A stretch of 64,000 nt of DNA from Macrostomum hystrix (GCA_950097015.1 CATNEN010000038.1:21886001-21950000), one strand, 5' to 3'; shown: positions 24,517-61,110, counted from the stretch's first letter. The notes: generated from the letters alone by a model not told the origin. Translations and numbers: made by a program.

Positions 24517-25662
24517 ATGGCCTCTTCGGCTTTAAATGTTGACATCCTTGACTGTCACGTTACTGATGCTGCTCTGTGGCCATTAATTGATGAAATCATT
24601 GATGATCTAGCCATGGAAGTGATCTTTGCCAGCCATATGGAGGCTAAAATGGGCGTTCTATTCCTACACGAGGAGCTACTAGCTGCTGAGCATGGCGGGG
24701 GTCGGGTTTCTAGTCGCATTGGCATGGGCGGCAATGGTCTTGGAGGCGAGCGATCTAGCAGCGATTCGGAGCCCCCATTGTTCGGTAAGCCTTTAATTGA
24801 TTGTCGAGCTAATTAGTTGTGTGTTTGTTATGCTTTCACACTTGTTTTTATGCTACTTTTAGTAGCTTAGCAGTAAACATTTTTGTATTGAATTTAACTT
24901 TCACATCTAAGGTTTTAGCCCAGTGATTAGGGCTACTGTATTCTAATCAATAGGTCTGAAGTTCGAATCTCTGTGCAGGGATTCGTGTTTTTTGTTGCAT
25001 GCCACATTTACTGCATTCTTCCCAACTCTTGTAGGGTTTTTTAGGTTGTGAAATTTGGGGACAGTATAGTCCTAGAATTCCTAAAGTCGATTTCTTTTGG
25101 CATCCAAAACAGTTTAACTACTACAAGTAGTTGATCAACTATTCCCGCAGGTCAACCCGCAGCCAAGCTGAAGCCTGTTATGTGCCGCTGTCCGAATTGT
25201 AACCGCAGCATGGCCGCGCTGCGCTTCGCTCCTCATTTAGAAAAGTGCATGGGCATGGGTCGGGTCAGCAGTCGTCTAGCCTCTCGCCGTATCGCCATTC
25301 AGCATCGTTATAGCGACGATTCGGATAGCGACGATCATCATCAGGGGCATCAGCATCATCATCATCATCAGCCGCCTATGAAACAGCGGCGCTCTATAAA
25401 GCGATCCTCGACGGCTCCTGGCAATGTCGCCAATCTGCCGCCTCCGCCGCCTCCGCCGCAGTTTCACGACGCGCCATCTGCTGCGCCCGGCTCCGGCGCG
25501 GTAGCCGGCGGCGACGACGACTGGGACGGTTTGAGCACGCCGTCGCCATCGAGCGTCAGCACCGGGAGCTCCGGCGGAGGCGGCGGAGGCAATGCTGTTT
25601 TAGCTAAAGTAGCACTGCAAAATCGGCATCAGCACGAGCATCATCATCATTCTAGACGTTGA
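24517..25662 (+). CDS. ATXN7L3: SAGA deubiquitinase-module subunit Sgf11/ATXN7L3; exons 24517-24784 and 25151-25662
   Basis: N-terminal helix [24 protein letters not shown]; Sgf11 zinc finger [38 protein letters not shown]; phase-1 GT-AG intron. Confidence 0.92.
24915..24985 (+). mobile_element. tRNA-like SINE head in the SGF11 intron
   Basis: A-box-like tagcccagtgattag and B-box gttcgaatc; no convincing cloverleaf. Confidence 0.4.
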
Positions 25663-26136
25663 GAATTGTTAATAAATCACTTAGAATACGATTCGATCTT
25701 TCGAATAACTCTCGTTCCACTCTATATATTTGAGTAGTCTAGAAGCTGGCATGAAAGTAAAAAATGCCCTAGTATCCATACACTTGCATTGAGTCGTACT
25801 CAAAATGTTGAGTGTCGTCAAATAAGGCCACTGGATCATTGGTATTGTTAGGGGTGCCCTGGGTGCTGTGCTTGCGTAGGCATGCCCGACTATTCAGGAT
25901 TGTTTTTTACTGATTGACTTGTGATATCAACTCGCTTCTAGTTGAATGCTATTTGTTTCTGGTTGGATAATATGCTTTTATCTAAAGTATCTTGCACTAT
26001 TGATTGTTGAATAAAATGTACATTTGCAGTAGGATTATACCGTATCAGACTTTTTGTGACTCTAATTTTATTTTGCGATCTTTTCGAGTTGGCTCCCTAA
26101 AAACATTAGGAACATTTCTTGAAAAGACAAGGCAAT

Positions 26137-26540
26137 TTCCCTGAACCTTCAGGACTATTTCCCTGAATCTTCAGGACTATATTTCTAAACCTTCAGAATC
26201 CTTCTCCTGAACCTTCAGGACTCTTTTCCTGAACCTTCAGGGGCTATTTCCCTGAACCTTCACGACTATTTGCCTGAACCTTCAGGACTATATATCTAAA
26301 TTTCAGAATCCTTCTCCTGAACTTTCAGGACTGTTCCCTTGAACCTTCAGGGGCTTTTTCCCTGAACCTTCAGGAATAATTCCATGAACCTTCAGTAATA
26401 TTTCCCGGAACCTTCATGACTATTTTCCTGAACCTTCAAGACTATGTTCCTGAACCTTCAGGGGCTATTTCCCTGAACCTTCTGGACTATATTTCTGAGC
26501 CGTCAGAACCCTTTTCCTGACCCTTCAGTAATGTTTCCCC
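26137..26540. repeat. About 22-bp degenerate intergenic minisatellite (SGF11-DHX16)
   Basis: Unit tttccctgaaccttcaggacta with internal dyad cctgaa-cc-ttcagg. Confidence 0.92.
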
Positions 26541-26619
26541 AATTATTCCATAGTTCTTATAGTCATAGTTCTCAAAGTTTAATTTTGTTCCCCCACTGCT
26601 TTTCTTCAGCCAGTCTCAA

Positions 26620-29600
26620 ATGTCGTTTCGTGGCAGCGGCGGTGGTCGTCAGTTTCGTCGGCCGGGCGGCCAGTCCAGCGGCGCCAACCAAGATGCCGAC
26701 AGCGACTTGTCCGAGGACAGCCCGGACGAGCGTCGGCCAGTTAGCAATTCGAAGCCTAAATCTCGCAATCGACAAAGCGACGACGACGCCGACGGTGAAG
26801 ACGCATTCGAACGCGAGGAGCAGCGTCGGCAGGCTGATCTGCGCGAGCGCGACGAATTCTCTAAGCGCGTGCTCGAACGAGAGCGCGACCGGACTCGGCG
26901 AATTGGCACCGGCGCCGAGTCGTCCGCTTCCAAAGCGGCTGCGGATCGGCGAGCAGCCGCGGCGGCTTCACGCGACTCGCATCAGCTGCGCGAATTGAGG
27001 ACGCAATCGCGTAGGGAATACCTTAACAAAAGGAAGTACGACAAGCTGCAGGACCTGGAGAAGGTTTGTGCCTTGATAGAAATATTATACCTGAGCTCAA
27101 GAAAAATGTTTTTGTCCGTCAGCAACTCACTTATAATTGTAGTGAATCATAAAATAAAAAATCTGGCGGTACGCAAAACGTCCTACTGAGAAATTTTTGT
27201 TGCAGAGAAATATATATATATATATATATATATTATAAAGGAGTGAGTCATTATGACTCATATGTTATTTTTAGAAGCACTGTCACGTGAATTTATATAC
27301 TTAGGCACTTGTTCCCCGGTGTCAAAAGGCGGGAGTTTAAGCGTTTAGGCACTTTTTTATTTCCCACTCTTTCTCTCTTTTCAGCTCTTTCGGTTTAAAG
27401 ACTCCTTTCCTTTCGAGCTATAGCCCAAGTCTTAAATTCCTAATTTCAGGTTTTCCCAGAATCAGATTTAAAATTGTATATTTTTTAAATCTAAATAAGA
27501 TTTTCCCTGATAATTTATTCAATTTAGTTTTTTTCAGTATCTTTCTCAATAATTAAAATAGTTTAAAATTCATGAAAAATCATAAATGTATTATTTCTTA
27601 ATGTCAAGGTTGTCTATATATTTTTTCTTTTGCTTCTACTTGATTTTACCTTAGTTTTCAGACAAAATATACTATGCTTTTCTCAGCATCCTACTAGCAG
27701 TAGGCAGGTTCGACAAAACGAATATTTTTCTTGTTTTCAATTTTAATAGGAAGTGCTCGACGAGGACGCCCTATTTGAAGACGAGGAGCTGACTGAGCGA
27801 GAACGTCTACAGAAGCGCTCCAAGAAGCAGATTCTGGAGGTGGCGAAAGCGCACGTGGCAGCTGGCGATGAGCAAAAAATCGATCGATATTTTATTCCTT
27901 CGAAAGATCGACAGGTGAGAATTATTTTGCTTGTGTAGACTCCGGACTGGAACAATTTGTGTCCCACAATGGGTGCTCAGCATTAATAAGAGGTTATTAA
28001 GGGTAGGTGCGGCGTCTCCCCAGTCCATGGACTGAACAGCCAGCCGAACGCACCAGCCGAATAACACTAATTATTGCTGAAGGTCAGCGGGCAATGGCAC
28101 ATCATTTGGTGACTAGACCCACAGCCAGCGAGGAGGCAGTTGCTGACTCCTGACACGCGCACACAGATACTGTACGCAGACATACGCTCACACAGGTGTG
28201 TACATCTGCCCTGACTTTCTCATCGTCAGGCAGTGTACACTTTCAATGTGCTTTGGAGGCTGGTCCACAAGGGCGTGAATTGCAAGACAAGCCCCCAAAG
28301 CCTTTCCTTCGCTGCGCCCGAAGTAAATGTGGCCTCGCCGCGGAATCGAGCTCATGGACCTTGGGTGCGAGAGGCAAACGCAATAACTGTATTAAATATT
28401 AAACGTTATTAAATATATGTGAAATATGTTTTGACCATGCTGTCCTACATACACTACTTAGAGTGGCAGTGTAAGTATTTTATTTGATCTCCCCATTCTC
28501 AAGAAATGCCACAGATAAGAACCCCACGTCCCTACTCACAATTGAAATCCATTGTTTTTGTGCTCAACCGCAGATCGATGATCGCTACCTGGAGGATGAG
28601 CACGAGAAGGGTCCCCACGGCGAGCAGAAGCGCTGGGAATCGGAGCACCTTGCGGCGGCCACATTCTCCGTTGGCGCCAGAGACGCCAGACGAGCCGCTC
28701 AGGCCAAAGATGACGAAGACGGCGGCTACCTGCTCGACGACGAGATTGACTTTGTTCGCGCTGTCACAATGCGCGGCAGTCGGGAAGGCGACGACGACTC
28801 GGCGCAGGCGAAGCTGACCGAGGCCCAGAAGCGCCGGCTGAGTCTGCAGGAGACTCGCCAGAGTCTGCCGGTATATCCGTTTCGCGACGACCTGTTGAGA
28901 GCTATCGAAACCAATCAGGTTTGGTCTTTGTTCTATCTACCAGTTTTTCTATGCCTAGCCCTGGCATTTTCCTTAGTGTTACTTCCTAAATCCTAAAATC
29001 AGTTTTTTTACTTTGCATTTTTAAACAGTATTTATCCTCCTTTCCTTAGTCTTCATATTTTCATTTCCGAATTAGTATTTACCATTTAAATACTTAATAT
29101 ATGTTTTTACCCCTCATATTCCCCAACTCCGTCTTTATCCATTCTATTCCCAATGTCAATCAGTCTTTATCTTTTTCAATCTCAATCAGTCCTCATCTCT
29201 CGCATTATCAACCAGTCTTTATCTCTCGCATTATCAACCAGTCTTTATCTCTCGCATTATCAACCAGTCTTTATCTCTCGCATTATCAACCAGTCTTTAT
29301 CTCTCGCATTATCAACCAGTCTTTATCTCTCGCATTATCAACCAGTCTTTATCTCTCGCATTATCAACCAGTCTTTATCTCTCGCATTATCAACCAGTCC
29401 TTATCCCTCGCATTATCAATCAGTCTTTATCTTTTTCAATCTCAATCAGTCCTTATCTCTCGCATTATCAATCAGTCTTGATCTTTTTTAATCTCAATCA
29501 GTCCTTATCTCTCGCATTATCAATCAGTCTTTATCTTTTTTAATCTCAATCAGTCCTTATCTCTCGCATTATCAATCAGTCTTTATCTTTTTTAATCTCA

Positions 29601-32600
29601 ATCAGTCCTTATCTCTCGCATTATCAATCAGTCATTATCTTTTTCAGTCTCAATCAGTCCTTATCTCTCGCATTATCAATCAGTCTTTATTTTTTCAATC
29701 TCAATCAGTCTTTCTCTTTCCCATTCATAATCATTCCTATTCTTTTGCAGAAACTTTCTATTATCGTACCAGTACTTAATCCTTCACAGTCTTCTATTTA
29801 ATTTTTTCCCCATTATTAAGCAACTTAATCCCTATTAAAATCATTCCCAGGTGCTAATTATTGAAGGTGAAACGGGCAGCGGCAAGTCCACCCAGATACC
29901 GCAATATCTATACGAAGCCGGCTATTGTAGGGACGGCAAGAAGGTTGGCTGCACTCAGCCTCGCCGCGTAGCCGCAATGTCCGTAGCGGCCCGAGTCGCT
30001 CAAGAGATGGGCGTGAAGCTTGGCAACGAGGTTGGTTACAGTATTCGATTCGAAGACTGCACTAGCGAGCGGACAGTTGTCAAATACATGACAGACGGTA
30101 TGCTGCTGCGCGAGTTTCTAACTGAGCCAGATCTGGGCTCCTACAGTGTTATGATTATTGACGAGGCTCATGAGCGCACTCTGCACACGGACGTCCTGTT
30201 CGGCTTGGTGAAGGATATCGCCAGATTTCGCCCGGAGCTGAAATTATTGATTAGTTCGGCTACTCTTGACGCAGAGAAGTTTTCTACCTTCTTTGACGAT
30301 GCCAATATCTTTCGCATACCCGGCCGGCGCTACAATGTTGACATCTATTATACAAAGGCGCCCGAAGCTGACTATGTCGACGCCGCTGTTGTATCAGTGC
30401 TGCAGATTCACCTCACGCAGCCTCTGCCTGGTGACATTCTAGTGTTCCTAACTGGCCAGGAAGAGATTGAAACAGCAGAAGAGATTCTCAAAGAGAAGAC
30501 TCGAAGGCTTGGGTCCAAAATGCGCGAGCTGATCATAACTCCTATCTATTCAACTCTACCGTCTGATATGCAGGGCAAGATCTTTGAGCCAACACCGCCT
30601 AACGCTCGCAAAGTGGTCATTGGTACTAATATTGCTGAGACTTCGCTAACTATTGACGGCATTGTCTACGTGATAGACACCGGGTATAGCAAGGTGAGCA
30701 ATGGGCTTTGAGCTCGAAGAATCCCATACTAGAAAAAATTCTTATTAAATAATCCTGATTTGAAATATCATCCCAATCTCGAAAGATGATACCCATTCTA
30801 AGGATAATCCTAATTCTGAAGATAATCCTAATTCTGAAGATAATCCTAATTCTGAAGATAATCCTAATTCTGAAGATGATCCTAATTCTGAAGATAATCC
30901 TAATTCTGGAGATAATCCTAATTCTGAAGATAATCCTAATTCTGAAGATAATCCTAATTCTGAAGATAATCCTAATTCTGAAGATGATCCTAATTCTGAA
31001 GATAATCCAAATTTTGAAGATAATCCTAATTCTGAAGATGATCCTAATTCTGAAGATAATCCTAATTCTGAAGATGATCCTAATTCTGAAGATAATCCTA
31101 ATTCTGAAGATGATCCTAATTCTGAAGATAATCCTAATTCTGAAGATAATCCTAATTCTGAAGATAATCCTAATTCTGAAGATGATCCTAATTCTGAAGA
31201 TAATCCTAATTCTGAAGATAATCCTAATTCTGAAGATAATCCTAATTCTGAAGATAATCCTAATTCTGAAGATAATCCTAATTCTGAAGATAATCCTAAT
31301 TCTGAAGATGATCCTAATTCTGAAGATAATCCTAATTCTGGAGATAATCCTAATTCTGAAGATAATCCTAATTCTGAAGATAATCCTAATTCTGAAGATA
31401 ATCCTAATTCTGAAGATGATCCTAATTCTGAAGATAATCCAAATTTTGAAGATAATCCTAATTCTGAAGATAATCCTAATTCTGAAGATAATCCTAATTC
31501 TGAAGATAATCCTAATTCTGAAGATGATCCTAATTCTGAAGATAATCCTAATTCTGAAGATAATCCTAATTCTGAAGATAATCCTAATTCTGAAGATGAT
31601 CCTAATTCTGAAGATAATCCTAATTCTGAAGATAATCCTAATTCTGAAGATAATCCTAATTCTGAAGATGATCCTAATTCTGAAGATAATCCTAATTCTG
31701 GAGATAATCCTAATTCTGAAGATAATCCTAATTCTGAAGATAATCCTAATTCTGAAGATAATCCTAATTCTGAAGATGATCCTAATTCTGAAGATAATCC
31801 AAATTTTGAAGATAATCCTAATTCTGAAGATGATCCTAATTCTGAAGATAATCCTAATTCTGAAGATGATCCTAATTCTGAAGATAATCCTAATTCTGAA
31901 GATGATCCTAATTCTGAAGATAATCCTAATTCTGAAGATAATCCTAATTCTGAAGATAATCCTAATTCTGAAGATGATCCTAATTCTGAAGATAATCCTA
32001 ATTCTGAAGATAATCCTAATTCTGAAGATAATCCTAATTCTGAAGATAATCCTAATTCTGAAGATGATCCTAATTCTGAAGATAATCCTAATTCTGAAGA
32101 TAATCCTAATTCTGAAGATAATCCTAATTCTGAAGATGATCCTAATTCTGAAGATAATCCTAATTCTGAAGATAATCCTAATTCTGAAGATAATCCTAAT
32201 TCTGAAGATGATCCTAATTCTGAAGATAATCCTAATTCTGGAGATAATCCTAATTCTGAAGATAATCCTAATTCTGAAGATAATCCTAATTCTGAAGATA
32301 ATCCTAATTCTGAAGATGATCCTAATTCTGAAGATAATCCAAATTTTGAAGATAATCCTAATTCTGAAGATGATCCTAATTCTGAAGATAATCCTAATTC
32401 TGAAGATGATCCTAATTCTGAAGATAATCCTAATTCTGAAGATGATCCTAATTCTGAAGATAATCCTAATTCTGAAGATAATCCTAATTCTGAAGATAAT
32501 CCTAATTCTGAAGATGATCCTAATTCTGAAGATAATCCTAATTCTGAAGATAATCCTAATTCTGAAGATAATCCTAATTCTGAAGATAATCCTAATTCTG

Positions 32601-35600
32601 AAGATAATCCTAATTCTGAAGATAATCCTAATTCTGAAGATGATCCTAATTCTGAAGATAATCCTAATTCTGAAGATAATCCTAATTCTGAAGATAATCC
32701 TAATTCTGAAGATGATCCTAATTCTGAAGATAATCCTAATTCTGGAAATAATCCTAATTCTGAAGATAATCCTAATTCTGAAGATAATCCTAATTCTGAA
32801 GATAATCCTAATTCTGAAGATGATCCTAATTCTGAAGATAATCCAAATTTTGAAGATAATCCTAATTCTGAAGATAATCCTAATTCTGAAGATAATCCTA
32901 ATTCTGAAGATAATCCTAATTCTGAAGATGATCCTAATTCTGAAGATAATCCTAATTCTGAAGATAATCCTAATTCTGAAGATAATCCTAATTCTGAAGA
33001 TGATCCTAATTCTGAAGATAATCCTAATTCTGAAGATAATCCTAATTCTGAAGATAATCCTAATTCTGAAGATGATCCTAATTCTGAAGATAATCCTAAT
33101 TCTGGAGATAATCCTAATTCTGAAGATAATCCTAATTCTGAAGATAATCCTAATTCTGAAGATGATCCTAATTCTGAAGATAATCCAAATTTTGAAGATA
33201 ATCCTAATTCTGAAGATGATCCTAATTCTGAAGATAATCCTAATTCTGAAGATGATCCTAATTCTGAAGATAATCCTAATTCTGAAGATGATCCTAATTC
33301 TGAAGATAATCCTAATTCTGAAGATAATCCTAATTCTGAAGATGATCCTAATTCTGAAGATAATCCTAATTCTGAAGATAATCCTAATTCTGAAGATAAT
33401 CCTAATTCTGAAGATGATCCTAATTCTGAAGATAATCAAAATTTTGAAGATAATCCTAATTCTGAAGATGATCCTAATTCTGAAGATAATCCTAATTCTG
33501 AAGATAATCCTAATTCTGAAGATAATCCTAATTCTGAAGATAATCCCAATTCGAAAGATAATCCCAATTCTAAAGATAATCCCAATTCTAAAGATAATCC
33601 CAATTCTAAAGATAATCCCAATTCAACAGATAATTCCAAATCGAAAGATAATCCCATTTTAAAGATAATCCCAATTCAAAAGATGATCCTAATTCTGAAG
33701 ATAATCCTAATTCTTAAGATAATAGTAATTCAAAAGATGATCCCAATTCAAAAGATAATCCCAATTCGAAAGATAATCCCGATTCTAAAGATAATCCCAT
33801 TTCTAAAGATAATCCCAATTTTAAAGATAATCCCAATTCTAAAGATAATCCCAATTCTAAAGATAATCCCAATTCAACAGATAATCCCAATTTTAAAGAT
33901 AATCCCAATTCTAAAGATAATCCCATTTCTAAAGATAATCCCGATTCTAAAGATAATCCCATTTCTAAAGATAATCCCAATTTTAAAGATAATCCCAATT
34001 CTAAAGATAATCCCATTTCTAAAGATAATCCCAATTTTAAAGATAATCCCAATTCTAAAGATAATCCCAATTCTAAAGATAATCCCAATTCTAAAGATAA
34101 TCCCAATTCAACAGATAATTCAAATTCGAGAGATAATCCCATTTTAAAGATAATAAAGAAAATTCCACTTCAAAAATTATCCCAATTCGAAATATATTCG
34201 AAAGATTCACTGACAAAAAATTATCTAGTTAATGCAGATTCGTAAGATAATCCCATTTCAAAAATAATTTGAGTTTGCTTGGAAATCCTAATTCAAGAAA
34301 GACATTCTTATTTCTTTCCTTAATCCCAATCCTAAGAATTATCCCAACTTAGAAGAATCTACCAGAACTATTGTTTTCCAAGCAGACGGGGTGCAGCATC
34401 ATAAGAAAATAAAATATATAATTAGTGTAATTTCGACCCGCCGCCAGGTGAAGTCCTACAACGCTCGCACAGGCATGGAGTCGCTTCTAGTTCAGCCAAT
34501 CTCCAAGGCTGGCGCCGATCAACGCGCCGGCCGTGCTGGCCGGGTGCGCGACGGTAAATGCTTCAGATTGTACACAGCGTGGACCTACAAGCACGAGTTA
34601 GAGAGCCAACCAGTGCCAGAGATTCAGCGCACTAATCTAGGCAATGTTGTCCTATTATTGAAATCCTTGGGCATCAACGATCTGTTGCATTTCGACTTCA
34701 TGGATCCGCCGCCCAATGACACTCTGGTGATGGCTCTGGAACAGCTCTACGCATTGGGCGCGCTGAACCACAAAGGCGAATTAACTAAACTGGGCCGACG
34801 CATGGCCGAATTGCCGTGCGATCCAATGCTATCCAAAATGATTCTGGCATCGGAAAAGTACAAATGCTCCGAAGAGATCATCACCATTGCCGCTATGCTG
34901 TCTGTTAACAATGCCATCTTCTACCGGCCCAAGGATAAGGCTATACACGCTGACACGGCTAGGAAGAGCTTTCATCGTCCAGGCGGCGATCACCTCACAC
35001 TGTTGAATGTGTTCAGTCAGTGGAAATCAGCCTCCTATTCTGTGCAATGGTGCTACGAGAATTTCATTCAGCACAGGTCTATGAAACGGGCCCGCGATAT
35101 ACGCGATCAATTCGAAGGCCTATTGGAACGAGTGGAAGTTGACCTAGTGTCCTGCAATAGCGACTCAGTGCCTATTAGGAAGGCTGTCACTGCTGGATTC
35201 TTTTATCACACGGCCAAGTTTAGCCGAGACGGTTATCGCACTGTTAAGCATCAGCACACTGTGCAGGTGACGTCACGTTATCTAATAATAATAATAATAA
35301 TAATTGCAGGAGGGCTGCGGGCAATGGCACACAGACACACAGATAACTTACGCAGGCATCCGCTCACATAGGTTTGTATTTCTGCCCTGACTTTCTCATT
35401 GTTAGGCAGTGTACACTCCTACTGTGCTTTGGAGGTACTTGGCAATGCAATACAAGCTCCCAAATTAATGCGGCCTCGCCGCGGAATCGAGCTTAGGGAC
35501 CTTGGTGCGAGAGGCAAACGCGTTAACCGCTCTGCCACTGCCATCGGACCTCCTCTTCATCACGTTGTCAAAGTAAGAGAAGGCTTCGCAATTTACGCAC

Positions 35601-36039
35601 TTGAGGGCCAACCTCAGTGAGTATGAGCAATGCCTGATGATGAGAAAGTCAGGGCATAAGTACACACCTGTGTGAGTGTGTGCTCAGGAGTCAACGAAAT
35701 GGGAATCAATCAATCAGATATGAAAAACTGATTGATTTGTAGCCTAGTAACCGTTTCTTATCTGTTTGCAAAACTTAATTATCGAAACAGGTGCATCCGA
35801 ATTCGTCCGTAGTCGAAGATCGACCGCCGTGGGTTATCTACTTCGAGCTAGTCTTCACCACCAAGGAGTTCATGCGGCAAGTCATCGAGATTGATCCGCG
35901 CTGGCTGCTAGAAGTGGCGCCGCACTATTACAAAGCCAAGGATATCGAGGCCGAGACTAGGAAAATGCCTAAACAGACCGGCCGAGCAAAAGAGGATGTC
36001 ACAAGGGACTATTCGGCTGCTCCGGCAATTAAAGGCTGA
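26620..36039 (+). CDS. DHX16: Pre-mRNA splicing DEAH helicase DHX16/Prp2 (about 954 aa); exons 26620-27063, 27750-27914, 28574-28918, 29851-30693, 34448-35266, 35791-36039
   Basis: Motifs [34 protein letters not shown] and [11 protein letters not shown]16-typical [27 protein letters not shown] and [10 protein letters not shown]. All five introns are phase-0 GT-AG. Confidence 0.96.
28070..28385 (-). mobile_element. tRNA-derived SINE, family A copy in DHX16 intron 2
   Basis: cacacaggtgtgtacatctgccctgactttctcat ... gccgcggaatcgagctc shared with other copies. Confidence 0.75.
29150..29715. repeat. 26-bp intronic minisatellite (DHX16 intron 3)
   Basis: Unit atcaaccagtctttatctctcgcatt, turning into a dimeric variant toward the 3' end. 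Confidence 0.95.
30770..34150. repeat. 18-bp intronic satellite, about 3.4 kb, with higher-order structure (DHX16 intron 4)
   Basis: Unit aattctgaagataatcct. Marker variants ctggag and ccaaattttgaa recur together. Diverged cccaattctaaagataat units follow 33540. Confidence 0.98.
35310..35700. mobile_element. Two oppositely oriented SINE family A copies in DHX16 intron 5
   Basis: Minus copy about 35310-35545 (ctgactttctcattgttaggcag ... cgctctgccact); headless plus copy about 35575-35700 (tgcctgatgatgagaaagtcagggc...acacctgtgtgag). Confidence 0.75.
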
Positions 36040-38308: not shown

Positions 38309-38462
38309 CGTGTTTAGCGCATTGTTTTTTTAGCCACTGTTCTTAGAGGGTTTGTTAATCATAAATTCTTGAATAGATTTTCTGCTTCAATATTTCCAGC
38401 AAGCATAGCAAACAGCTGTTTGAGCACAGTTACGTGATAATTAACAGCTGCCACTTCTGAGC

Positions 38463-39062: not shown

Positions 39063-39499
39063 TAGCTTTAAAATAAGCTCGTTTTTTATAATATTACATT
39101 TATTGTCCCTGTGCTAACCAAATATACTTTTTAGCTTTCTCATATTTGATCGGTCGCATGCAAAAAAAGAGAATGCCACTTCTTTGAAGTCTGCAATTTT
39201 AATTAGACTTTCATTTCAGACTATTTGCAAGCCTTCAATGTACTTTCCGTCCCAGCTTCCATTTCTTTTGTCTTAGGATGCCTGGTAATAAAAATATTAT
39301 TTTGTTGTTAACATTTCCCCCTGTGTGTTGGACTGTTTGCCTTTCGAGACACAAATTACGGAGTCCTTGAGAATATATCTAGCGGTCAAAGAATGTATTT
39401 TTCGCTTTCCTACACACATTTTTGTTTTTTTTCACATTTGTATCGTTTTATTTCTGTAAATCAATTTGTGAGGCGCGATGCGCGCTTACTCCAAATTAT

Positions 39500-45380: not shown

Positions 45381-45435
45381 GGATTCAACTTATATACTAA
45401 TTATCTCATTTTAGCTGGCCAAATGTAGCGAATTG

Positions 45436-52400: not shown

Positions 52401-54346
52401 ATACCTGGAGGCATACACAATGGCACTTTTCTTACCTTCAAGGCAGCATAGTATGACTGCTTCCGTTTGTTATAATATTTTGTCCATTTAGGACAGACTG
52501 CACGAAAGCTTACCAGGTGATCCCGGAGTCCCATTGTGTTGATCACACTGAGCTTATTTGTAACTAGGTAGTCTGCACTGCAACCTTCTGAAGGCTTCTT
52601 TAAGCACTTAAGAATTCTTTAAGCACGCCAAAGCCTAGGCTTGTCAGGTTTAATTAAGCCTTAATTGAGCTTAAAAAGTTTAAATGTTTATTAGGCTAGT
52701 GAGCAAAGCATAATTTAAACTACAGATCGCACAAATAAGTAGTTTATTTACCTAGCCCCAGACTAAGTGGAGTCTGATTATCTAATTTTCTTGTACCAAG
52801 CCAGCAACATATGAATTCATTTTATAAGGTTAAATTTTACATCCTAAATTCAGTAATTGGAGTAGCTTAAGTATAGACACTAGGAATAAACTAAGTCTGG
52901 GCTCTGAGGCAGAGTTGGTTGAGGTAAAATTCAATTTATCAATGTGTTGCCTAGACTGCAACTGAGAGAGAGAGGACCGCCAATCAGTTTTTCGCACATT
53001 CTGACGTGCGGAGTTTTGGGCTGAGGAGGTGGGTCGGGTGGGTCTGATTTATTTAAGAAAAAAGGGCGCGCACTGACTGGGGCGGTGAGGAGGCGGTCTG
53101 CTGAAACTTTTTTGAATTTTTATTTATTAAAATTCGCACCTCTGCCTTGGCAGAGAGAGGAATGTGCTTACCAATAGAGCTGGCCTAGGGCTACCTCACT
53201 GTCCACAAATGGACTATTCTGTGTTCACCTTATTTTAAGTTCACTGAGTTCTCTTTACATTGTCAGAGTTTGGGAGTTTGATCCCCTCAACTTCATCCAG
53301 AGGAGAAATTCCGCCCATTTATAATAAAGCCAAGACTATTTTTATACAATAAGTGCACCTAGAATAATGTAATACAAATGTAATATACTTTAGTTACGCA
53401 TAAGACAATACACATACGCCTAGGCCTACAAAATCTTCTTGATAAAAGTTCTTGATAAAATAGGCCCCTGAACAAAGGGAGGGCTTAACCTTGGTTCTTC
53501 AGCCTGGTACAACACGACATGCTATTCTCCATTATCCTATCTCTCTCTCCCCTGTCTCAACTTTCCCGTCTCATCTCTTCTGTGTCTCCTGTCTCCCATG
53601 TCTCATCTCTCACGTGTCTCATCTGTCCCCTATCTCATCTCTCCCGTCTCTCATCTCTCGTGTCTCATCTCTCCCGTCTCATCTCTCCCGTGTCTCATCT
53701 CTCTCGTGTCTCATCTCTCCCGTGTCTCATCTCTCCCCTATCTCATCTCTCCCGTCTCTCATCTCTCTCGTGTCTCATCTCTTTCGTGTCTCATCTCTCC
53801 CTTGTCTCATCTCACTCGTGTCTCATCTCTCCCCCGTCTCATCTCTCCCCTGTCTCATCTCTTCACTCTCTCATCTTTTAATTAGACCCACTGTCGCATC
53901 CAGTATTTTCTCTCATTGGCCAGCAAGGCCTATATGTTCGATGACCTCTGTCATATTCTTTCAGACTGCGCTGCTGTTTTGTAGAACTGTAGCAAAATGT
54001 GCTCGCAACACTACTTAGTCAGTAGAACTAAAAGAATATCATTACTAACATCTCTTAGGAGGCGGTCAATGCCACCCTGCCACTATCGTTGGTGATGCTG
54101 CGGGCTATAGGCGACTTTCATCGCCGCACTGGCCGACGCGTTGGATTCAAACCAGCCGGCGGTATTCGCACAGCCGCCGATGCTCTAGACTACCTGCATC
54201 TGGTGCACTTCGCCTTAGGACCCGAGTGGCTGCAGCCCAGCCTGTTTCGCATCGGCGCCAGCTCGCTGCTAGCCGAAATTGAGAAGGCTGTTTTCCGCCT
54301 GACAATGGGTCGAGACGGTTGCGCCGCAGATCTGCCTATGGCTTGA
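46490..54346 (+). CDS. DERA: Deoxyribose-phosphate aldolase; exons 46490-47002, 47897-48073, 54059-54346; no genomic ATG at the 5' end
   Basis: AWLLKSATLIDLTTLAGDD, VATGFPSGQ, EVDIVINR, LKTIL, AGADFIKTSTGKE, VGFKPAGGIR and FRIGASSLL. Phase-0 introns; 325 codons. Confidence 0.95.
47085..47810. repeat. 30-bp intronic minisatellite (DERA intron 1)
   Basis: Unit aaacttcccagatcctcaggtaggttttct. Confidence 0.96.
48279..49390 (-). mobile_element. 5'-truncated RTE-like non-LTR retrotransposon (RT C-terminal half)
   Basis: AFDSV, GVLQGDTLAPFLF, GYADDLALL, FVYLG and LLYNAETWTL in an uninterrupted ORF (48327-49352); short 3' UTR and (TTG)n tail at about 48281-48297. Confidence 0.93.
50079..52620 (-). 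mobile_element. Spliced, partly decayed tyrosine-recombinase-like gene with C-terminal PWWP domain (Crypton-like element) antisense in DERA intron 2; exons about 52618-52436, 52054-51803, 51524-51445, 51165-51013, 50882-50079
   Basis: GT-AG exons encode LCFGNGNANSQDVVCNLTLDQV, KVTCTEFRIFVETK|ALLSGEDPQLVADRLYHTPKVARESY, an Ala/Thr repeat linker, and WQPGDLVFAYWPYKNESWRPAMVC...LHVQFFDDPPTRDWV (PWWP). One in-frame stop and a phase mismatch indicate decay. Confidence 0.6.
53565..53876. repeat. 16-18-bp pyrimidine-rich minisatellite near the 3' end of DERA intron 2
   Basis: Unit tctcatctctcccgtg and variants. Confidence 0.9.
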
Positions 54347-54696: not shown

Positions 54697-55249
54697 AGTA
54701 GGTTGAGTAGTACTCAAGACACACCCAGAGACTGTTAAGTAGGTTGAGTAGTACTCAAGACACACCCCGAGACAGTTGAGTAGGTTGAGTAGTACTCAAG
54801 ACACACCCCGAGACAGTTGAGTAGGTTGAGTAGTACTCAAGACACACCCCGAGACAGTTGAGTAGGTTGAGTAGTACTCAAGACACACCCAGAGACAGTT
54901 AAACTGGTTGAGTAGTACTCAAGACACACCCAGAGACAGTTGAGCTGGTTGAGTAGTACTCAAGACACACCCAGAGACAGTTGAGCTGGTTGAGTAGTAC
55001 TCAAGACACACCCAGAGACAGTTGAGCTGGTTGAGTAGTACTCAAGACACACCCAGAGGCAGTTGAGCTCGTTGAGTAGTACTCAAGACACACCCAGAGA
55101 CAGTTAAACTGGTTGAGTAGTACTCAAGACACACCCAGAGACAGTTGAGCTGGTTGAGTAGTACTCAAGACACACCCAGAGGCAGTTGAGCTCGTTGAGT
55201 AGTACTCAAGACACACCCAGAGACAGTTGAGCTGGTTGAGTAGTACTCA
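54697..55249. repeat. 41-bp intergenic minisatellite (DERA-SEC61G)
   Basis: Unit gagtagtactcaagacacacccagagacagttgagctggtt, about 13 copies; dyad ttgagta-g-tactcaa. Confidence 0.97.
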
Positions 55250-55285
55250 GTGCTTAACAATCAAATGTTTCCAGCAGGCAAGCGC

Positions 55286-55492
55286 ATGGATCAGATTGTG
55301 AAGTTCGCGGATCCGCTTCGACAATTCTCCAAGGACTCGCTGCGCCTAGTGAAGCGGTGTACAAAGCCAGACTGGAAGGAGTTCAGAAAGATAGCCGCCG
55401 CCACAGCTGTCGGCTTCGCCATCATGGGCTTCATTGGCTTCTTTGTGAAGCTGATTCACATTCCAATCAACAATATCATTGTTGGATCGTGA
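55286..55492 (+). CDS. SEC61G: Protein transport protein Sec61 subunit gamma (68 aa, intronless)
   Basis: [68 protein letters not shown]; acceptor tttccag at 55274. Confidence 0.97.
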
Positions 55493-55854: not shown

Positions 55855-57468
55855 ATCTTTCTCTACAGGATTAGCTCATCTATCTCTACAGGATTAGCCC
55901 ATCTATCTCTACAGGATTAGCCCATCTATCTCTACAGGATTAGCCCATCTATCTCTACAGGATTAGCCCATCTATCTCTACAGGATTAGTCCATCTATCT
56001 CTACAGGATTAGCCCATCTATCTCTACAGGATTAGTCCATCTATCTCTACAGGATTAGTCCATCTATCTCTACAGGATTAGCCCATCTATCTCTACAGGA
56101 TTAGTCCATCTATCTCTACAGGATTAGCCCATCTATCTCTACTGGATTAGCCCATCTATCTCTACAGGATTAGTCCATCTATCTCTACAGGATTAGCTCA
56201 TCTATCTCTACTGGATTAGCCCATCTATCTCTACAGGATTAGTCCATCTATCTCTACAGGATTAGCTCATCTATCTCTACAGGATTAGTCCATCTATCTC
56301 TACAGGATTAGTCCATCTATCTCTACAGGATTAGTCCATCTATCTCTACAGGATTAGTCCATCTATCTCTACAGGATTAGTCCATCTATCTCTACAGGAT
56401 TAGCCCATCTATCTCTACAGGATTAGCTCATCTATCTCTACTGGATTAGCCCATCTATCTCTACAGGATTAGTCCATCTATCTCTACAGGATTAGCTCAT
56501 CTATCTCTACAGGATTAGTCCATCTATCTCTACAGGATTAGTCCATCTATCTCTACAGGATTAGCCCATCTATCTCTACAGGATTAGTCCATCTATCTCT
56601 ACAGGATTAGTCCATCTATCTCTACAGGATTAGCCCATCTATCTCTACAGGATTAGCCCATCTATCTCTACAGGATTAGCCCATCTATCTCTACAGGATT
56701 AGCTCATCTATCTCTACAGGATTAGCTCATCTATCTCTACAGGATTAGTCCATCTATCTCTACAGGATTAGTCCATCTATCTCTACAGGATTAGTCCATC
56801 TATCTCTACAGGATTAGCCCATCTATCTCTACAGGATTAGTCCATCTATCTCTACAGGATTAGCCCATCTATCTCTACAGGATTAGCCCATCTATCTCTA
56901 CAGGATTAGCTCATCTATCTCTACAGGATTAGTCCATCTATCTCTACAGGATTAGTCCATCTATCTCTACAGGATTAGCTCATCTATCTCTACAGGATTA
57001 GTCCATCTATCTCTACAGGATTAGCCCATCTATCTCTACAGGATTAGCTCATCTATCTCTACAGGATTAGTCCATCTATCTCTACAGGATTAGTCCATCT
57101 ATCTCTACAGGATTAGTCCATCTATCTCTACAGGATTAGCCCATCTATCTCTACAGGATTAGCCCATCTATCTCTACAGGATTAGTCCATCTATCTCTAC
57201 AGGATTAGTCCATCTATCTCTACAGGATTAGCCCATCTATCTCTACAGGATTAGCCCATCTATCTCTACAGGATTAGCCCATCTATCTCTACAGGATTAG
57301 CCCATCTATCTCTACAGGATTAGTCCATCTATCTCTACAGGATTAGTCCATCTATCTCTACAGGATTAGTCCATCTATCTCTACAGGATTAGCCCATCTA
57401 TCTCTACAGGATTAGTCCATCTATCTCTACAGGATTAGCCCATCTATCTCTACAGGATTAGTCCATCT
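55855..57468. repeat. 23-bp intergenic minisatellite (about 70 copies; SEC61G-CHP)
   Basis: Unit tctacaggattag(cc/tc/ct)catctatc. Confidence 0.98.
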
Positions 57469-57594
57469 GGAATTATAATCTCAGCTTTTAAGGACAAATT
57501 TGGCAAGATAGCGCCTCTAGATACTACTAGAGGCAGAGCCCAGCAGCAGTAGTATCTATCCAACTATGCTAAATCCGCAGCATCAATAGTCGGC

Positions 57595-59392
57595 ATGGGC
57601 AGCTCCTATTCGCACTCTCCCCTAGCTGAGTACGACGTTGCCGCCATCGTTGCCAACACCGGCCTGTCGCATGCCAACATTCGTCAGCTGCATCGGCGCT
57701 ATCGCCACCTGTGCCTGCACCACGGCGGCCCGTCGTCCGCTTCGTCCACTGCGCCAAAAGCTCTGTCCAAGCGTCAGCTGCTGGCCGATCCGGAACTGAG
57801 TTCGAATCCGCTGGCTGAGCGCATTGTGGCCGCAATGTTTCCTCATTCGGTTGAGACGCTCACCTTTCCCGAATTCTGCGCCGCTGTGGCAGTTTTCCAG
57901 CCGGCAACGGACGCCGCCGGCCGGCTGGCTAAAGTACAATTCGTCTATCGCATGCTGGCCATTGAGGAGAACGATTATCTGACCGCATTTGAGCTCTGCT
58001 CAACTCTCCAGATGCTTGTTGGCAACCACTTGCCGTTGGAACAGGTAGAATAACACCTGTGCCAGCTTGTTTGTCGCTGCTCTGCTCACATGCCTCCGAC
58101 CCTGCAATCATCCCTACAACCCTGCACTCATCCCTACAACCCTGCACTCATCCCTACTACACTGCACTCATCCCTACAACCCTGCACCCATGCCTACGAC
58201 CCTGCATATATCCTTTTGACCCTGAGACGTACCTACGACCCTGTGCCCATTCCTTCCCTACAACCCTGCACCCATCCCTTCCTTTCGACCCTGCACCCAT
58301 ACCTTCCTTTCGACCCAGCACCCATCCCTTCCCTACGACCCTGCACCCATCCCTTCTTTTTGACCCTGCACCCATCCCTTCCCTGCGATCCTGCACCCAT
58401 CCCTTCCTTTCGACCCTGCACCCATACCTTCCTTTCGACCCAGCACCCATCCCTTCCCTACGACCCTGCACCCATCCCTTCCCTACGAACCTGCACCCAT
58501 CCCTTCTTTTCGACCTTTCATCCACCCCTTCCTTTTGACCCTGCACCCATCCCTTCCCTGCGACCCTGCACCCATCCCTACCTTTCGACCCTGCACCCAT
58601 CCCTACCTTTCGACCCTGCACCCATCCCTACCTTTCGACCCTGCACCCATCCCTTCTCTTCGACCTTGCACCCATCCCTTCTCTTCGACCCGGCACCCAT
58701 CCCTTCTTTTCGAAACTGCACCCATCCCTTCTCTTCGACCCTGCACCCATCCCTTCTGATCGACCCTGCACCCATCCCTTCTCTTCGACCCTGCACCCAC
58801 CCTACCTTTCGACCCTGCACCCATCCCTTCTCATCGACCCTGCACCCATCCTTTCTTTTCGAACCTGCACCCATTCCTTCCCTACGACCCTGCACCCGCC
58901 CCTTCGATCCGGAACCCGTGCCTTTAATCCATATTATAGCTTAACCTTCAATATCTGCTCCTATCCATACAACGAGCGGTCTAACGCGTTTGGCTCTCGC
59001 ACCAGAGGTCCACGAGCTCCATTCCGCGTAATTGGGCCACATAATTTGTGGCGCAGTTGCGGAGAGAAATTTGTGGCCTACCATTTACGCAATTTACGCC
59101 CTTGAGGGCCAACCTCCAAGGCACAGTGAGAGTATGCACTGCCTGACGATGAAAAAGCTGCGGGTCTAGTGTCACTAAATAATGTTACCATTCAACGCTC
59201 ATGTCGTTCCCGTCTTTATCCATTATTAAAGATAAAAATGCTCATTTAAACCGATGATGGCAGGTGCAATCAATCGCCTGCCGCGCCCTACAAGAAGTCG
59301 ACAAAGACAAACACAATCGCATCACGAATCAAGAGTTTGTTAACGCAATGGAGGGCCTTGACGTGGAACAGAAGATGTCTGTGCCGTTTTGA
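57595..59392 (+). CDS. Calcineurin B homologous protein (CHP)-like EF-hand protein; exons 57595-58044 and 59264-59392
   Basis: Myristoylation-type start MGSSYS, TGLSHANIRQLHRRYRHL, PELSSNPLAERIV, KVQFVYRM, LQMLVG, and C-terminus EFVNAMEGLDVEQKMSVPF (cf. CHP1 DVEQKMSIRF). Phase-0 intron. Confidence 0.88.
58097..58915. repeat. About 25-bp C-rich intronic minisatellite (CHP intron)
   Basis: Unit cgaccctgcacccatcccttccttt and variants. Confidence 0.93.
58972..59165 (+). mobile_element. tRNA-derived SINE, family A copy
   Basis: gagcggtctaacgcgtttggctctcgcacc ... gagggccaacctccaaggcacagtgagag. Confidence 0.7.
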
Positions 59393-59590
59393 GACCATTT
59401 TCTAAGTCTGTTTTTAATTTTCAAAGAACCATAGAATGATTTAGAAGTTAGCTTTCATTTAATTTAACACATTGAGGTGCTGTATTGTATGCTCAAATGC
59501 TCATTTGTAGCTTCGGCTGTCCGTTATTCTGGTTTGTTTTTATCTGTAAGTTTATCGACTAGTTCTACTAGGGATCAGAGTGAGTTAAGA

Positions 59591-61110
59591 CTGTGTACAC
59601 AGCTGTCACTTATCTCTCATGGGTCTGTGTACACAGCTGTCACTTATCTCTCATGGGTCTGTGTACACAGCTGTCACTTATCTCTCATGGGTCTGTGTAC
59701 ACAGCTGTCACTTATCTCTCATGGGTCTGTGTACACAGCTGTCACTTATCTCTCATGGGTCTGTGTACACAGCTGTCACTTATCTCTCATGGGTCTGTGT
59801 ACACAGCTGTCACTTATCTCTCATGGGTCTGTGTACACAGCTGTCACTTATCTCTCATGGGTCTGTGTACACAGCTGTCACTTATCTCTCATGGGTCTGT
59901 GTACACAGCTGTCACTTATCTCTCATGGGTCTGTGTACACAGCTGTCACTTATCTCTCATGGGTCTGTGTACACAGCTGTCACTTATCTCTCATGGGTCT
60001 GTGTACACAGCCGTCACTTATCTCTCATGGGTCTGTGTACACAGCCGTCACTTATCTCTCATGGGTCTGTGTACACAGCTGTCACTTATCTCTCATGGGT
60101 CTGTGTACACAGCTGTCACTTATCTCTCATGGGTCTGTGTACACAGCTGTCACTTATCTCTCATGGGTCTGTGTACACAGCCGTCACTTATCTCTCATGG
60201 GTCTGTGTACACAGCCGTCACTTATCTCTCATGGGTCTGTGTACACAGCTGTCACTTATCTCTCATGGGTCTGTGTACACAGCTGTCACTTATCTCTCAT
60301 GGGTCTGTGTACACAGCTGTCACTTATCTCTCATGGGTCTGTGTACACAGCTGTCACTTATCTCTCATGGGTCTGTGTACACAGCTGTCACTTATCTCTC
60401 ATGGGTCTGTGTACACAGCTGTCACTTATCTCTCATGGGTCTGTGTACACAGCTGTCACTTATCTCTCATGGGTCTGTGTACACAGCTGTCACTTATCTC
60501 TCATGGGTCTGTGTACACAGCTGTCACTTATCTCTCATGGGTCTGTGTACACAGCTGTCACTTATCTCTCATGGGTCTGTGTACACAGCTGTCACTTATC
60601 TCTCATGGGTCTGTGTACACAGCTGTCACTTATCTCTCATGGGTCTGTGTACACAGCTGTCACTTATCTCTCATGGGTCTGTGTACACAGCCGTCACTTA
60701 TCTCTCATGGGTCTGTGTACACAGCCGTCACTTATCTCTCATGGGTCTGTGTACACAGCTGTCACTTATCTCTCATGGGTCTGTGTACACAGCTGTCACT
60801 TATCTCTCATGGGTCTGTGTACACAGCTGTCACTTATCTCTCATGGGTCTGTGTACACAGCCGTCACTTATCTCTCATGGGTCTGTGTACACAGCCGTCA
60901 CTTATCTCTCATGGGTCTGTGTACACAGCTGTCACTTATCTCTCATGGGTCTGTGTACACAGCTGTCACTTATCTCTCATGGGTCTGTGTACACAGCTGT
61001 CACTTATCTCTCATGGGTCTGTGTACACAGCTGTCACTTATCTCTCATGGGTCTGTGTACACAGCTGTCACTTATCTCTCATGGGTCTGTGTACACAGCT
61101 GTCACTTCTC
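59591..61110. repeat. 34-bp minisatellite (about 45 copies) downstream of the CHP-like gene
   Basis: Unit ctgtgtacacagctgtcacttatctctcatgggt; contains the perfect palindrome ctgtgtacacag. Confidence 0.98.

What the first reader, a model, noticed from the sequence alone, without database searches (positions are those of the whole stretch)
24517..61110. Eight-gene candidate operon with a different minisatellite in every intergenic gap
Seen: SGF11, DHX16, orphan, NUPR1, ZDHHC16, DERA, SEC61G and CHP-like are all on the + strand, 0.9-2.8 kb apart and functionally unrelated. Each begins just after an apparently unpaired acceptor AG (24513, 26609, 38399, 41214, 44186, 46489, 55274, 57580). All seven gaps contain one or two tandem arrays, each with its own unit (22, 29/34, 43+36, 33+37/31, 26, 41, 23 bp). 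In six of seven gaps the array stops about 25-140 nt before the acceptor; DERA is the exception at about 760 nt. The minus-strand gaps kazrin-ICT1-AMMECR1 have no such arrays. Established: flatworms, nematodes and tunicates resolve polycistronic RNA by SL trans-splicing, and C. elegans intercistronic regions are typically about 100 nt. Inference: this is a ~35-kb polycistron whose long spacers are built from minisatellites that may act in processing, with position mattering more than sequence.
Basis: partly seen in the sequence, partly recalled or inferred. Interest (0 to 1): 0.85.

Follow-up and report, generated by a model that had tools for sequence, protein, structure and literature searches.

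The report
Flatworm spliced-leader operon candidate, repeat-swollen spacers
Eight same-strand genes of the flatworm Macrostomum hystrix are real, and at least two demonstrably receive the genus's trans-spliced leader, but the tandem repeats between them are as dense in their introns, so this looks like an ordinary example of the repeat-swollen operons already published for this genus.

Summary
Eight + strand genes lie 0.9-2.7 kb apart, and every gap holds one or two minisatellite arrays with the stated periods and distances. The assembly is Macrostomum hystrix, by an exact match of its statistics to the published table. RNA contigs carry a non-genomic 5' tail joined exactly at 38399 and 41214. 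The tail equals the last 25 nt of the published Macrostomum spliced leader. So SL trans-splicing is shown at the two acceptors I could test; the other six are predicted only.

After subtracting repeats, all seven spacers fit the published M. lignano operon rule (<1 kb). That 2021 paper already describes repeat-rich operon spacers and proposes neutral accumulation.

The proposed processing role for the arrays is not supported:
- Arrays fill 62% of the gaps and 59% of the same genes' introns, leaving out one transposon-laden intron (40% with it).
- About 22% of 20 random 10-kb samples of this chromosome is array.
- Most unit families recur at dozens to hundreds of other loci.
- The position near the acceptor is not significant (p=0.08).
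- Two same-strand gaps on the minus strand have no arrays.

Co-transcription of all eight genes remains unproven. The scan has noted the same kind of locus before on other DNA of this genome.

The parts
24514..25662 (+). SGF11-like gene. Predicted SL acceptor G at 24513. CDS exons about 24517-24702 and 25180-25662.
   Evidence: Pfam Sgf11 E=3.5e-14; acceptor context and ATG at +3. The acceptor was not tested with RNA.
26131..26539 (.). Gap 1 array: 22-bp unit x18, 74% matches. It ends 70 nt before the DHX16 acceptor.
   Evidence: TRF; layout; more than 50 related arrays elsewhere in the genome.
26610..36039 (+). DHX16-like DEAH helicase gene with six coding exons. Predicted acceptor G at 26609. 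Introns 3 and 4 hold arrays at 29156-29733 and 30795-34154.
   Evidence: Pfam DEAD, Helicase_C, HA2_N and HA2_C on separate exons; exon landmarks; intron array shares of 62% and 90%.
36311..38309 (.). Gap 2 arrays: a 29-bp unit x50 followed by a related 34-bp unit x17.5. They fill 85% of the gap and end 90 nt before the orphan's acceptor.
   Evidence: TRF; units related to each other and to the DERA-intron 30-mer; at least 343 candidate family loci in the genome.
38400..39538 (+). Orphan gene mRNA. The SL is joined at acceptor G 38399. CDS 38463-39062. The 3'UTR runs at least into the 43-bp array.
   Evidence: X4 contig 38399-39538 with 0 mismatches and the 5' tail CGAAGACTCAATTTATTGCAT; no Pfam family.
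39509..39978 (.). Gap 3 array 1: 43-bp unit x10.9. RNA contigs enter it from both sides.
   Evidence: TRF; X4 contigs 38399-39538, 39595-39667 and 39861-40704.
39861..40704 (+). RNA-covered unique middle of gap 3. Depth is 13.3, against 28.4 on the orphan CDS. It is probably a long 3'UTR isoform of the orphan gene; the strand is inferred.
   Evidence: X4 contig 31. Depth is zero at 41079-41213, directly before the NUPR1 acceptor.
40688..41078 (.). Gap 3 array 2: 36-bp unit x10.8. Each unit holds a CCAAT and an ATTGG. It ends 136 nt before the NUPR1 acceptor.
   Evidence: TRF consensus; only 2 weak relatives in the genome.
41215..41707 (+). NUPR1/p8-like gene. The SL is joined at acceptor G 41214. 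CDS 41237-41500.
   Evidence: SL tail at 41214 in X1, X2 and X4; Pfam Phospho_p8.
41708..44120 (.). Gap 4: a 33-bp array (41708-42709, 98% matches) and a 37-bp array (43201-44120), with 491 nt of unique DNA between them. The last array ends 66 nt before the ZDHHC16 acceptor.
   Evidence: TRF; 61 candidate related loci.
44187..45380 (+). ZDHHC16 gene in a single exon. Predicted acceptor G at 44186. The AUG at the end of the SL would be in frame with the ORF.
   Evidence: Pfam DHHC E=5.5e-29; ZDHHC16 orthologues, 68% identity to M. lignano; frame check.
45430..45732 (.). Gap 5 array: 26-bp unit x11.7. It starts 50 nt after the ZDHHC16 stop codon and ends 757 nt before the DERA acceptor.
   Evidence: TRF; layout.
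46490..54346 (+). DERA (DeoC aldolase) gene. Predicted acceptor G at 46489. The frame is open from the acceptor, with no genomic ATG for 199 nt. Intron arrays lie at 47073-47813 and 53540-53862. Transposon ORFs sit in intron 2.
   Evidence: Pfam DeoC; frame; RT ORF at 48327-49352 on the minus strand; TRF.
54701..55249 (.). Gap 6 array: 41-bp unit x13.4. It ends 25 nt before the SEC61G acceptor.
   Evidence: TRF; layout.
55275..55492 (+). SEC61G gene. Predicted acceptor G at 55274. CDS 55286-55492.
   Evidence: Pfam SecE E=1.1e-14; ATG at +11.
55855..57468 (.). Gap 7 array: 23-bp unit x70. It ends 112 nt before the CHP-like acceptor.
   Evidence: TRF; layout.
57581..59392 (+). CHP-like EF-hand gene. 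Predicted acceptor G at 57580. Exon 1 is 57595 to about 58050 and exon 2 about 59273-59389. The intron holds 20- and 25-bp arrays at 58099-58905.
   Evidence: EF-hand hit on exon 2; frames; TRF.
59591..61131 (.). 34-bp array x45, starting about 200 nt after the CHP-like stop codon. It has the same layout as the gap arrays, but no following + strand gene was found in the window.
   Evidence: TRF; open frames.

Best explanation
This is a run of eight housekeeping-type genes of Macrostomum hystrix. Their mRNAs start at a 3' splice site and receive the genus's 35-nt spliced leader in trans; the leader ends in AUG. By the published Macrostomum criterion the run counts as one operon-type unit, or a few adjacent ones. 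That criterion asks for same-strand SL genes less than 1 kb apart after repeats are subtracted.

Mechanism. RNA polymerase II that has passed an upstream gene's 3' end reaches the next acceptor. SL trans-splicing there gives the downstream mRNA its capped 5' end.

The minisatellites are neutral filler. This genome expands tandem arrays in any tolerant non-coding DNA, including introns, 3'UTRs, outrons and intergenic DNA. The arrays sit towards the acceptor because the first 200-470 nt after each stop codon is 3'UTR. The last 25-136 nt must keep the branch point, pyrimidine tract and AG.

Shown: the genes, the arrays, the SL at 2 of 8 acceptors, and RNA running through most of gap 3.

Inferred: the SL at the other six acceptors, co-transcription, and neutrality of the arrays.
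For: - Species.
- Leader. Contigs of three runs carry the tail ...CTGCGAAGACTCAATTTATTGCAT joined at G 38399 or G 41214. With that G, this equals the last 25 nt of the published SL (PMC8629364).
- Joined in trans. The leader exon lies at 28 other genomic places and nowhere in the window.
- Distance rule. Repeat-adjusted stop-to-acceptor distances are 538, 361, 1291, 764, 806, 379 and 474 nt. The 1291 falls to <=815 once the RNA-backed 3'UTR is removed. The published rule is <1 kb.
- Precedent. Polycistronic precursors with several SL sites make up almost 7% of assembled M. lignano transcripts (PMC5730564).
- Gap 3. RNA covers all unique sequence from the orphan's acceptor to the second array, but not the last 135 nt before NUPR1's acceptor. 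That leaves at most about 510 nt, or 136 nt without repeats, between the upstream 3' end and the next acceptor.
- Neutrality:
  - Array share is 62% in gaps, 59% in introns (40% with the transposon-laden intron) and 22% in random samples.
  - The unit families are dispersed over the genome.
  - Position near the acceptor gives p=0.076, and 7/7 gaps versus 5/9 introns gives p=0.069.
  - Arrays are not enriched next to gene starts genome-wide.
Against: - No RNA molecule spanning two cistrons was seen, and contigs break in every array.
- Six of the eight acceptors are untested.
- Among runs X1-X3 (closely related organisms A and B), X2 has NUPR1 contigs but none for the orphan, and X3 the reverse. 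This hints at separate regulation, although the tool warns that holes prove nothing.
- All seven gaps being occupied is somewhat more regular than the introns (5 of 9) and unlikely at chromosome-average density (0.015). A mild preference of arrays for these spacers is therefore not excluded.
- The distance rule is operational, and its false-positive rate is unknown.
Confidence: 0.62

Rival explanations
1. This is a co-directional cluster of SL-trans-spliced genes, most of which have their own promoter in the preceding gap. SL trans-splicing only trims each gene's own outron. On this reading the block is not one polycistron, or it splits into several short units or hybrid operons with internal promoters.
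For: [quoted passage not shown]
- Physical gaps are 0.9-2.7 kb, which leaves room for promoters. Regions of up to 2 kb upstream drive faithful expression in M. lignano transgenes.
- Orphan and NUPR1 contigs occur independently in runs X2 and X3.
- The array 136 nt before NUPR1's acceptor carries about 21 CCAAT/ATTGG motifs.
- RNA depth drops to zero in the 89-135 nt before both tested acceptors.
Against: - After repeats are removed the spacers are short.
- In gap 3 the upstream transcript reaches to within about 510 nt of the next acceptor, leaving little room for termination plus a separate promoter.
- The CCAAT count in arrays is not clearly above chance: about 3 of 22 arrays, where about 1.3 are expected. 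This is my rough estimate, not a tool result.
- The tool warns that contig holes are not evidence of absence.
Confidence: 0.28
2. The minisatellites are functional spacers of a polycistron. They could slow the polymerase, separate 3'-end formation from trans-splicing, or bind factors. Their position before the acceptor would matter more than their sequence.
For: - All seven gaps carry arrays, against 5 of 9 introns, and six of seven end 25-136 nt before the acceptor.
- The joint occupancy has a probability of 0.015 at chromosome-average density.
- A further array follows the last gene in the same layout.
Against: - Array share is the same in introns as in gaps.
- Neither the occupancy contrast (p=0.069) nor the position bias (p=0.076) is significant.
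- 10-15% of random 10-kb samples are just as array-rich.
- Arrays genome-wide show no preference for gene starts.
- The families are dispersed, and the units share no motif beyond one family.
- The gap before ICT1, whose reading frame opens at a CAG acceptor, and the gap before AMMECR1 are array-free.
- In gap 3 the first array lies inside stable transcribed RNA, apparently a 3'UTR, and not in a discarded spacer.
- The published analysis reads the repeats as neutral.
Confidence: 0.06

Closest known systems
Macrostomum lignano SL operons with repeat-rich intergenic regions (Ustyantsev & Berezikov 2021, PMC8629364; transcriptional units of Wudarski et al. 2017, PMC5730564)
   Same: - The leader is the same: its last 25 nt are identical.
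- The genes are same-strand conserved housekeeping genes.
- The spacers are inflated by tandem and simple repeats.
- The repeat-adjusted distances fall under the 1-kb rule.
- With eight genes, the run sits at the top of the two-to-eight range that paper quotes for C. elegans and calls similar in M. lignano.
   Different: - The species differs: this is M. hystrix, for which operons have not been catalogued (PMC10468722 only counts SL genes).
- Adjusted distances here are measured from the stop codon, not from a mapped poly(A) site.
- Co-transcription is not shown.
Caenorhabditis elegans operons (SL2-resolved, about 100-nt intercistronic regions)
   Same: - Co-directional unrelated genes each start at a trans-splice acceptor.
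- In gap 3, the repeat-free distance left between the end of upstream RNA coverage and the next acceptor is at most about 136 nt.
   Different: - There is one leader type and no specialised SL2.
- Physical spacers of 0.9-2.7 kb are ten to twenty times longer.
- The leader ends in AUG and can donate a start codon.
- No U-rich element was identified.
Minisatellite-inflated introns of M. hystrix
   Same: - The arrays are of the same kind: 16-57 bp units over 0.3-3.4 kb.
- They make long non-coding intervals out of short ones.
- In this window every intron longer than 900 nt, except the transposon-laden DERA intron 2, is 62-90% array.
   Different: Here the host interval is a gene-to-gene spacer or 3'UTR, not an intron.

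Membership tests
SL trans-spliced gene (Macrostomum SL) | The mature RNA carries the leader, which is not encoded upstream, joined exactly at a 3' splice-site AG. | tested here: met
   Met for the orphan (38399, run X4) and NUPR1 (41214, runs X1, X2 and X4).
SL trans-spliced gene (Macrostomum SL) | The leader exon is encoded by separate SL RNA genes elsewhere in the genome. | tested here: met
   There are 28 exact copies of the 25-nt leader end on other contigs or about 6 Mb away, many in units of about 11.6-11.7 kb. There are none in the window, even with 2 mismatches allowed.
Macrostomum operon (published operational rule) | Adjacent same-strand genes, with the downstream one SL trans-spliced, lie less than 1 kb apart after RepeatMasker and TRF intervals are subtracted. 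| tested here: met
   With TRF arrays only, and measuring from stop codons (an upper bound), the distances are 538, 361, 1291, 764, 806, 379 and 474 nt. The 1291 falls to <=815 after the RNA-backed 3'UTR is removed. SL status is shown for two downstream genes and predicted for the rest.
Operon in the strict sense (polycistronic transcription unit) | One promoter and a single precursor RNA containing two or more cistrons. | not testable with these tools
   Only contigs were available, and they break in every array.
Operon in the strict sense (polycistronic transcription unit) | There are no independent capped transcription start sites before the downstream genes. | not testable with these tools
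   No CAGE, cap or chromatin data could be reached.
Functional intercistronic element (for example the C. elegans Ur element) | A conserved motif or structure at a fixed distance upstream of the trans-splice site, specific to intercistronic regions. | tested here: not met
   - The units share no motif across gaps, apart from one 29/34/30-mer family that also sits in an intron.
- Arrays are as dense in introns.
- The position bias is not significant.

The most novel reading that the evidence does not exclude
Minisatellites are preferentially retained in the spacers of Macrostomum SL operons. Transcribing a long array downstream of a gene's coding region could buy time or distance between 3'-end formation and trans-splicing of the next cistron, or could tune how much polymerase reaches it. 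They would then be sequence-independent, position-dependent regulators of operon output.
Probability: 0.06. Interest if true: 0.7.

Novelty: new member of a known kind. Interest (0 to 1): 0.27.

Why it matters
If confirmed by long reads, this would be an eight-gene operon at the upper end of the size range known in this genus. It lies in a cleaner, non-polyploid genome than M. lignano. That makes it a convenient test locus for how 3'-end formation and SL trans-splicing cope with kilobase-long repetitive spacers.

As it stands, it mainly documents that M. hystrix shares the repeat-swollen operon architecture already published for its sister species. It also shows that the arrays need no special function to explain where they lie.

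Tried and rejected
As the tool advised, I used the neighbouring part 38310-41707. That used the only call, so six acceptors stay untested.
I therefore obtained no transcript contigs and no sister-species loci.
The background rests on 20 evenly spaced 10-kb samples of contig C38 only.
- The homologue search with ZDHHC16 confirmed orthology. It returned no M. hystrix transcript-derived protein, so it could not show an SL-donated start.
- Rfam and tRNA scans of the window found nothing. No small RNA genes hide in the gaps.
- AATAAA/ATTAAA scans gave no consistent poly(A) signal placement.
- I considered a tunicate, nematode or rotifer origin. The leader sequence and the assembly statistics rejected these.
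- I considered that the arrays derive from amplified local acceptors. The units do not resemble the adjacent acceptors by eye, and three of the families are dispersed genome-wide.
- Multi-exon genes were searched exon by exon, by reference. I built and searched no joined spliced model.

Full report
**What is there**

Pfam and homology searches, run exon by exon, confirm seven of the eight + strand genes:
- Sgf11
- a DEAH helicase of DHX16 type
- p8/NUPR1
- the DHHC palmitoyltransferase ZDHHC16
- the DeoC aldolase DERA
- SecE/SEC61G
- an EF-hand CHP-like gene

The eighth gene, the orphan, has no family but is expressed.

The stop-to-acceptor gaps measure 947, 2360, 2152, 2686, 1109, 928 and 2088 nt. 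The last array ends 70, 90, 136, 66, 757, 25 and 112 nt before the named AG. Each AG follows a pyrimidine-rich tract. The start codon lies 3-63 nt downstream, or the reading frame opens directly at the acceptor, as in ZDHHC16 and DERA.

**Which organism**

The window's genome has 220,453,370 bases in 42 contigs, and the window's contig is 35,345,953 bases long. These three numbers are exactly those of the Macrostomum hystrix assembly in Table 1 of Wiberg et al. 2023 (PMC10468722). That paper reports that about 20% of M. hystrix genes are SL trans-spliced. It leaves the repeat content for later work.

**Direct RNA evidence**

- Contigs of X4 carry a non-genomic 5' tail, ...CGAAGACTCAATTTATTGCAT, joined exactly at G 38399 and at G 41214. 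X4 has 0 mismatches over 2.5 kb, so it comes from the same strain.
- Contigs of X1 and X2, from closely related organisms, carry the same tail at 41214, up to CTGCGAAGACTCAATTTATTGCAT.
- With the shared G, this is the last 25 nt of the published 35-nt M. lignano spliced leader, CGGTCTCTTACTGCGAAGACTCAATTTATTGCATG (PMC8629364).
- The same 25-mer occurs at 28 other places in the genome, many spaced about 11.6-11.7 kb apart on three small contigs. It occurs nowhere in the window.

The other six acceptors remain predictions.

**What RNA says about the spacer**

In X4 the orphan's contig runs from the acceptor through the CDS and 476 nt further, into the first copies of the 43-bp array (38399-39538). 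A second contig covers 39861-40704, from the last copies of that array to the first 17 nt of the 36-bp array. Its depth is 13.3, against 28.4 on the gene.

The 135 nt between the second array and NUPR1's acceptor have depth 0, and so do the 89 nt before the orphan's acceptor. Genomic DNA contamination would cover those pieces, so the mid-gap signal is RNA.

Its abundance is about half that of the mRNA. I therefore infer a long 3'UTR isoform of the orphan that contains the first array, and not a rare precursor. The strand cannot be read from contigs. If so, the distance from the upstream 3' end to the next acceptor is at most about 510 nt, or 136 nt without repeats.

This supports read-through co-transcription of the orphan-NUPR1 pair. 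It also places at least one array inside a 3'UTR, not in a discarded spacer.

Against tight coupling, X2 shows NUPR1 contigs but none for the orphan, and X3 the reverse. The tool warns that such holes prove nothing.

**What is already known**

Ustyantsev and Berezikov (PMC8629364) analysed M. lignano and made these points:
- They subtracted RepeatMasker and TRF intervals from intergenic distances.
- This sharpened the SL-to-SL distances into a bimodal distribution with its main peak near 100 bp.
- They set a 1-kb repeat-adjusted rule for operon membership.
- They hypothesised neutral accumulation of repeats.

Wudarski et al. (PMC5730564) found that almost 7% of assembled transcripts are precursors with several SL sites. 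They also found that simple and tandem repeats make up 15% of the M. lignano genome.

Applied here, the rule gives 538, 361, 1291, 764, 806, 379 and 474 nt from the stop codon, with the 3'UTR still included. The 1291 falls to <=815 after the RNA-backed UTR is removed. All seven spacers pass. The locus is a new member, in a sister species, of a described kind. Earlier notes of this scan describe several similar clusters elsewhere in this genome.

**Are the arrays special to the spacers?**

| Compartment | Array share |
|---|---|
| The seven gaps | 62% |
| Introns of the same genes | 40% |
| The same introns without DERA intron 2, which holds transposons | 59% |
| Neighbouring minus-strand gene block | 3% |

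Apart from the transposon-laden DERA intron 2, every intron longer than 900 nt is 62-90% array.

Twenty evenly spaced 10-kb samples of the same chromosome average 22% array (range 0-68%), and 18 of the 20 hold at least one array.

Statistical tests:
- Occupancy of 7/7 gaps against 5/9 introns gives Fisher p=0.069.
- If the arrays' insertion point were uniform over the unique spacer sequence, their closeness to the acceptor would have p=0.076. The 200-470 nt of 3'UTR in front of them explains the direction of the bias.
- For seven stretches of the same unique length placed in the random samples, the chance that all are interrupted averages 0.015. It reaches 5-13% in the three most array-rich of the 20 samples.

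The block is thus an array-rich neighbourhood, but its spacers are not distinguishable from its introns.

In the random samples, array flanks are followed by an ATG opening 60 or more codons in 19% of cases, against 17% at control positions. This proxy is crude. It gives no sign that arrays in general sit in front of gene starts.

**Are the units private?**

Within the window they mostly differ. However, the 29- and 34-mers of gap 2 are related to each other and to the 30-mer in DERA intron 1, on the same strand.

| Array family | Relatives elsewhere in the genome |
|---|---|
| Gap 1 (22-mer) | more than 50 matches |
| Gap 2 (29/34-mer) | at least 343 candidate places, up to 2 kb at 70-79% identity |
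| Gap 4 (33- and 37-mer) | 61 candidate places |
| Gap 3 (43- and 36-mer) | 2-3 weak matches |

The matches cover the arrays only, not their flanks. These are dispersed minisatellite families, not locus-specific elements.

**Internal control**

On the minus strand, kazrin-like (SAM domain), ICT1 (RF-1 domain) and AMMECR1 follow each other with two gaps of about 1.2 kb that hold no array. ICT1's frame opens at a CAG acceptor, as another first-stage note suggests. An SL-type same-strand gap can therefore do without arrays.

**Verdict**

The reading as an SL-trans-spliced operon candidate is supported as far as the data reach: two of two tested acceptors carry the leader, the published distance rule is met, and upstream RNA approaches the next acceptor in one gap. 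A single 35-kb polycistron is not shown; internal promoters or several shorter units remain plausible.

The idea that the minisatellites act in processing is not supported.

The kind of locus is published for M. lignano and has been noted repeatedly by this scan in M. hystrix. Interest is modest.

**Limits**
- Only one read-laying run was available, and only contigs were on hand.

Noticed in passing
window 40688-41078; also 6081-6468 and 41708-42709: The 36-bp array that ends 136 nt before NUPR1's acceptor has a CCAAT (GACCAATCAG) and an ATTGG in every unit, about 21 NF-Y-type boxes in 390 bp. Two other arrays also carry CCAAT/ATTGG in each unit. This could be an internal promoter or chance; I expect about 1.3 of 22 arrays by chance and see 3.
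   Followed up: partly
window 44187, 46490, 24514: The AUG that ends the spliced leader would be in frame with the ORFs of ZDHHC16, DERA and SGF11. DERA has no genomic ATG, GTG or TTG in frame from 46490 to 46735. ZDHHC16's first genomic ATG is 87 nt in.
   Followed up: partly
G000 contigs C15, C17 and C42 (for example C17:2765-120870): The leader exon recurs at a spacing of about 11.6-11.7 kb on three small contigs, which suggests SL RNA genes embedded in a long tandem unit. There are 28 exact copies genome-wide.
   Followed up: no
window 38425-38736 versus 41214-41629, runs X1-X3: Orphan and NUPR1 contigs are both present in X1. Only NUPR1 is present in X2, and only the orphan in X3. This is a possible sign of uncoupled expression of neighbouring cistrons, or a contig dropout.
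   Followed up: no
window 48327-49352 (-) and 50079-52620: A reverse-transcriptase ORF (RVT_1) lies on the opposite strand inside DERA intron 2. Beside it lies the stretch that another first-stage note calls a Crypton-like element. This intron is long because of transposons, not arrays.
   Followed up: partly
window 17679-18554 (+): An ORF with a Pif1 2B domain, probably a Helitron remnant, lies in the transposon-rich region between the minus-strand block and SGF11. A short transposase-like ORF at 22449-22664 (-) was seen but not searched.
   Followed up: partly
window 1-2107: A G-rich 57-bp array (59% GC) shows a higher-order period of 285 bp (5 units, 94% matches). It runs off the left end of the window.
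   Followed up: no
window 36311-38309 and genome-wide: The 29/34-mer family (core ATCCTCAGGATTA) has at least 343 candidate loci on many contigs. Only the array itself matches, not the flanks, so how such a minisatellite family disperses is unexplained.
   Followed up: partly
window 38980-39020: A CAG/CAA-rich stretch coding for glutamines in the orphan CDS attracts many unrelated 31-mers and foreign contigs in all runs. This inflates depth there (up to 730), which is an artefact and not expression.
   Followed up: no
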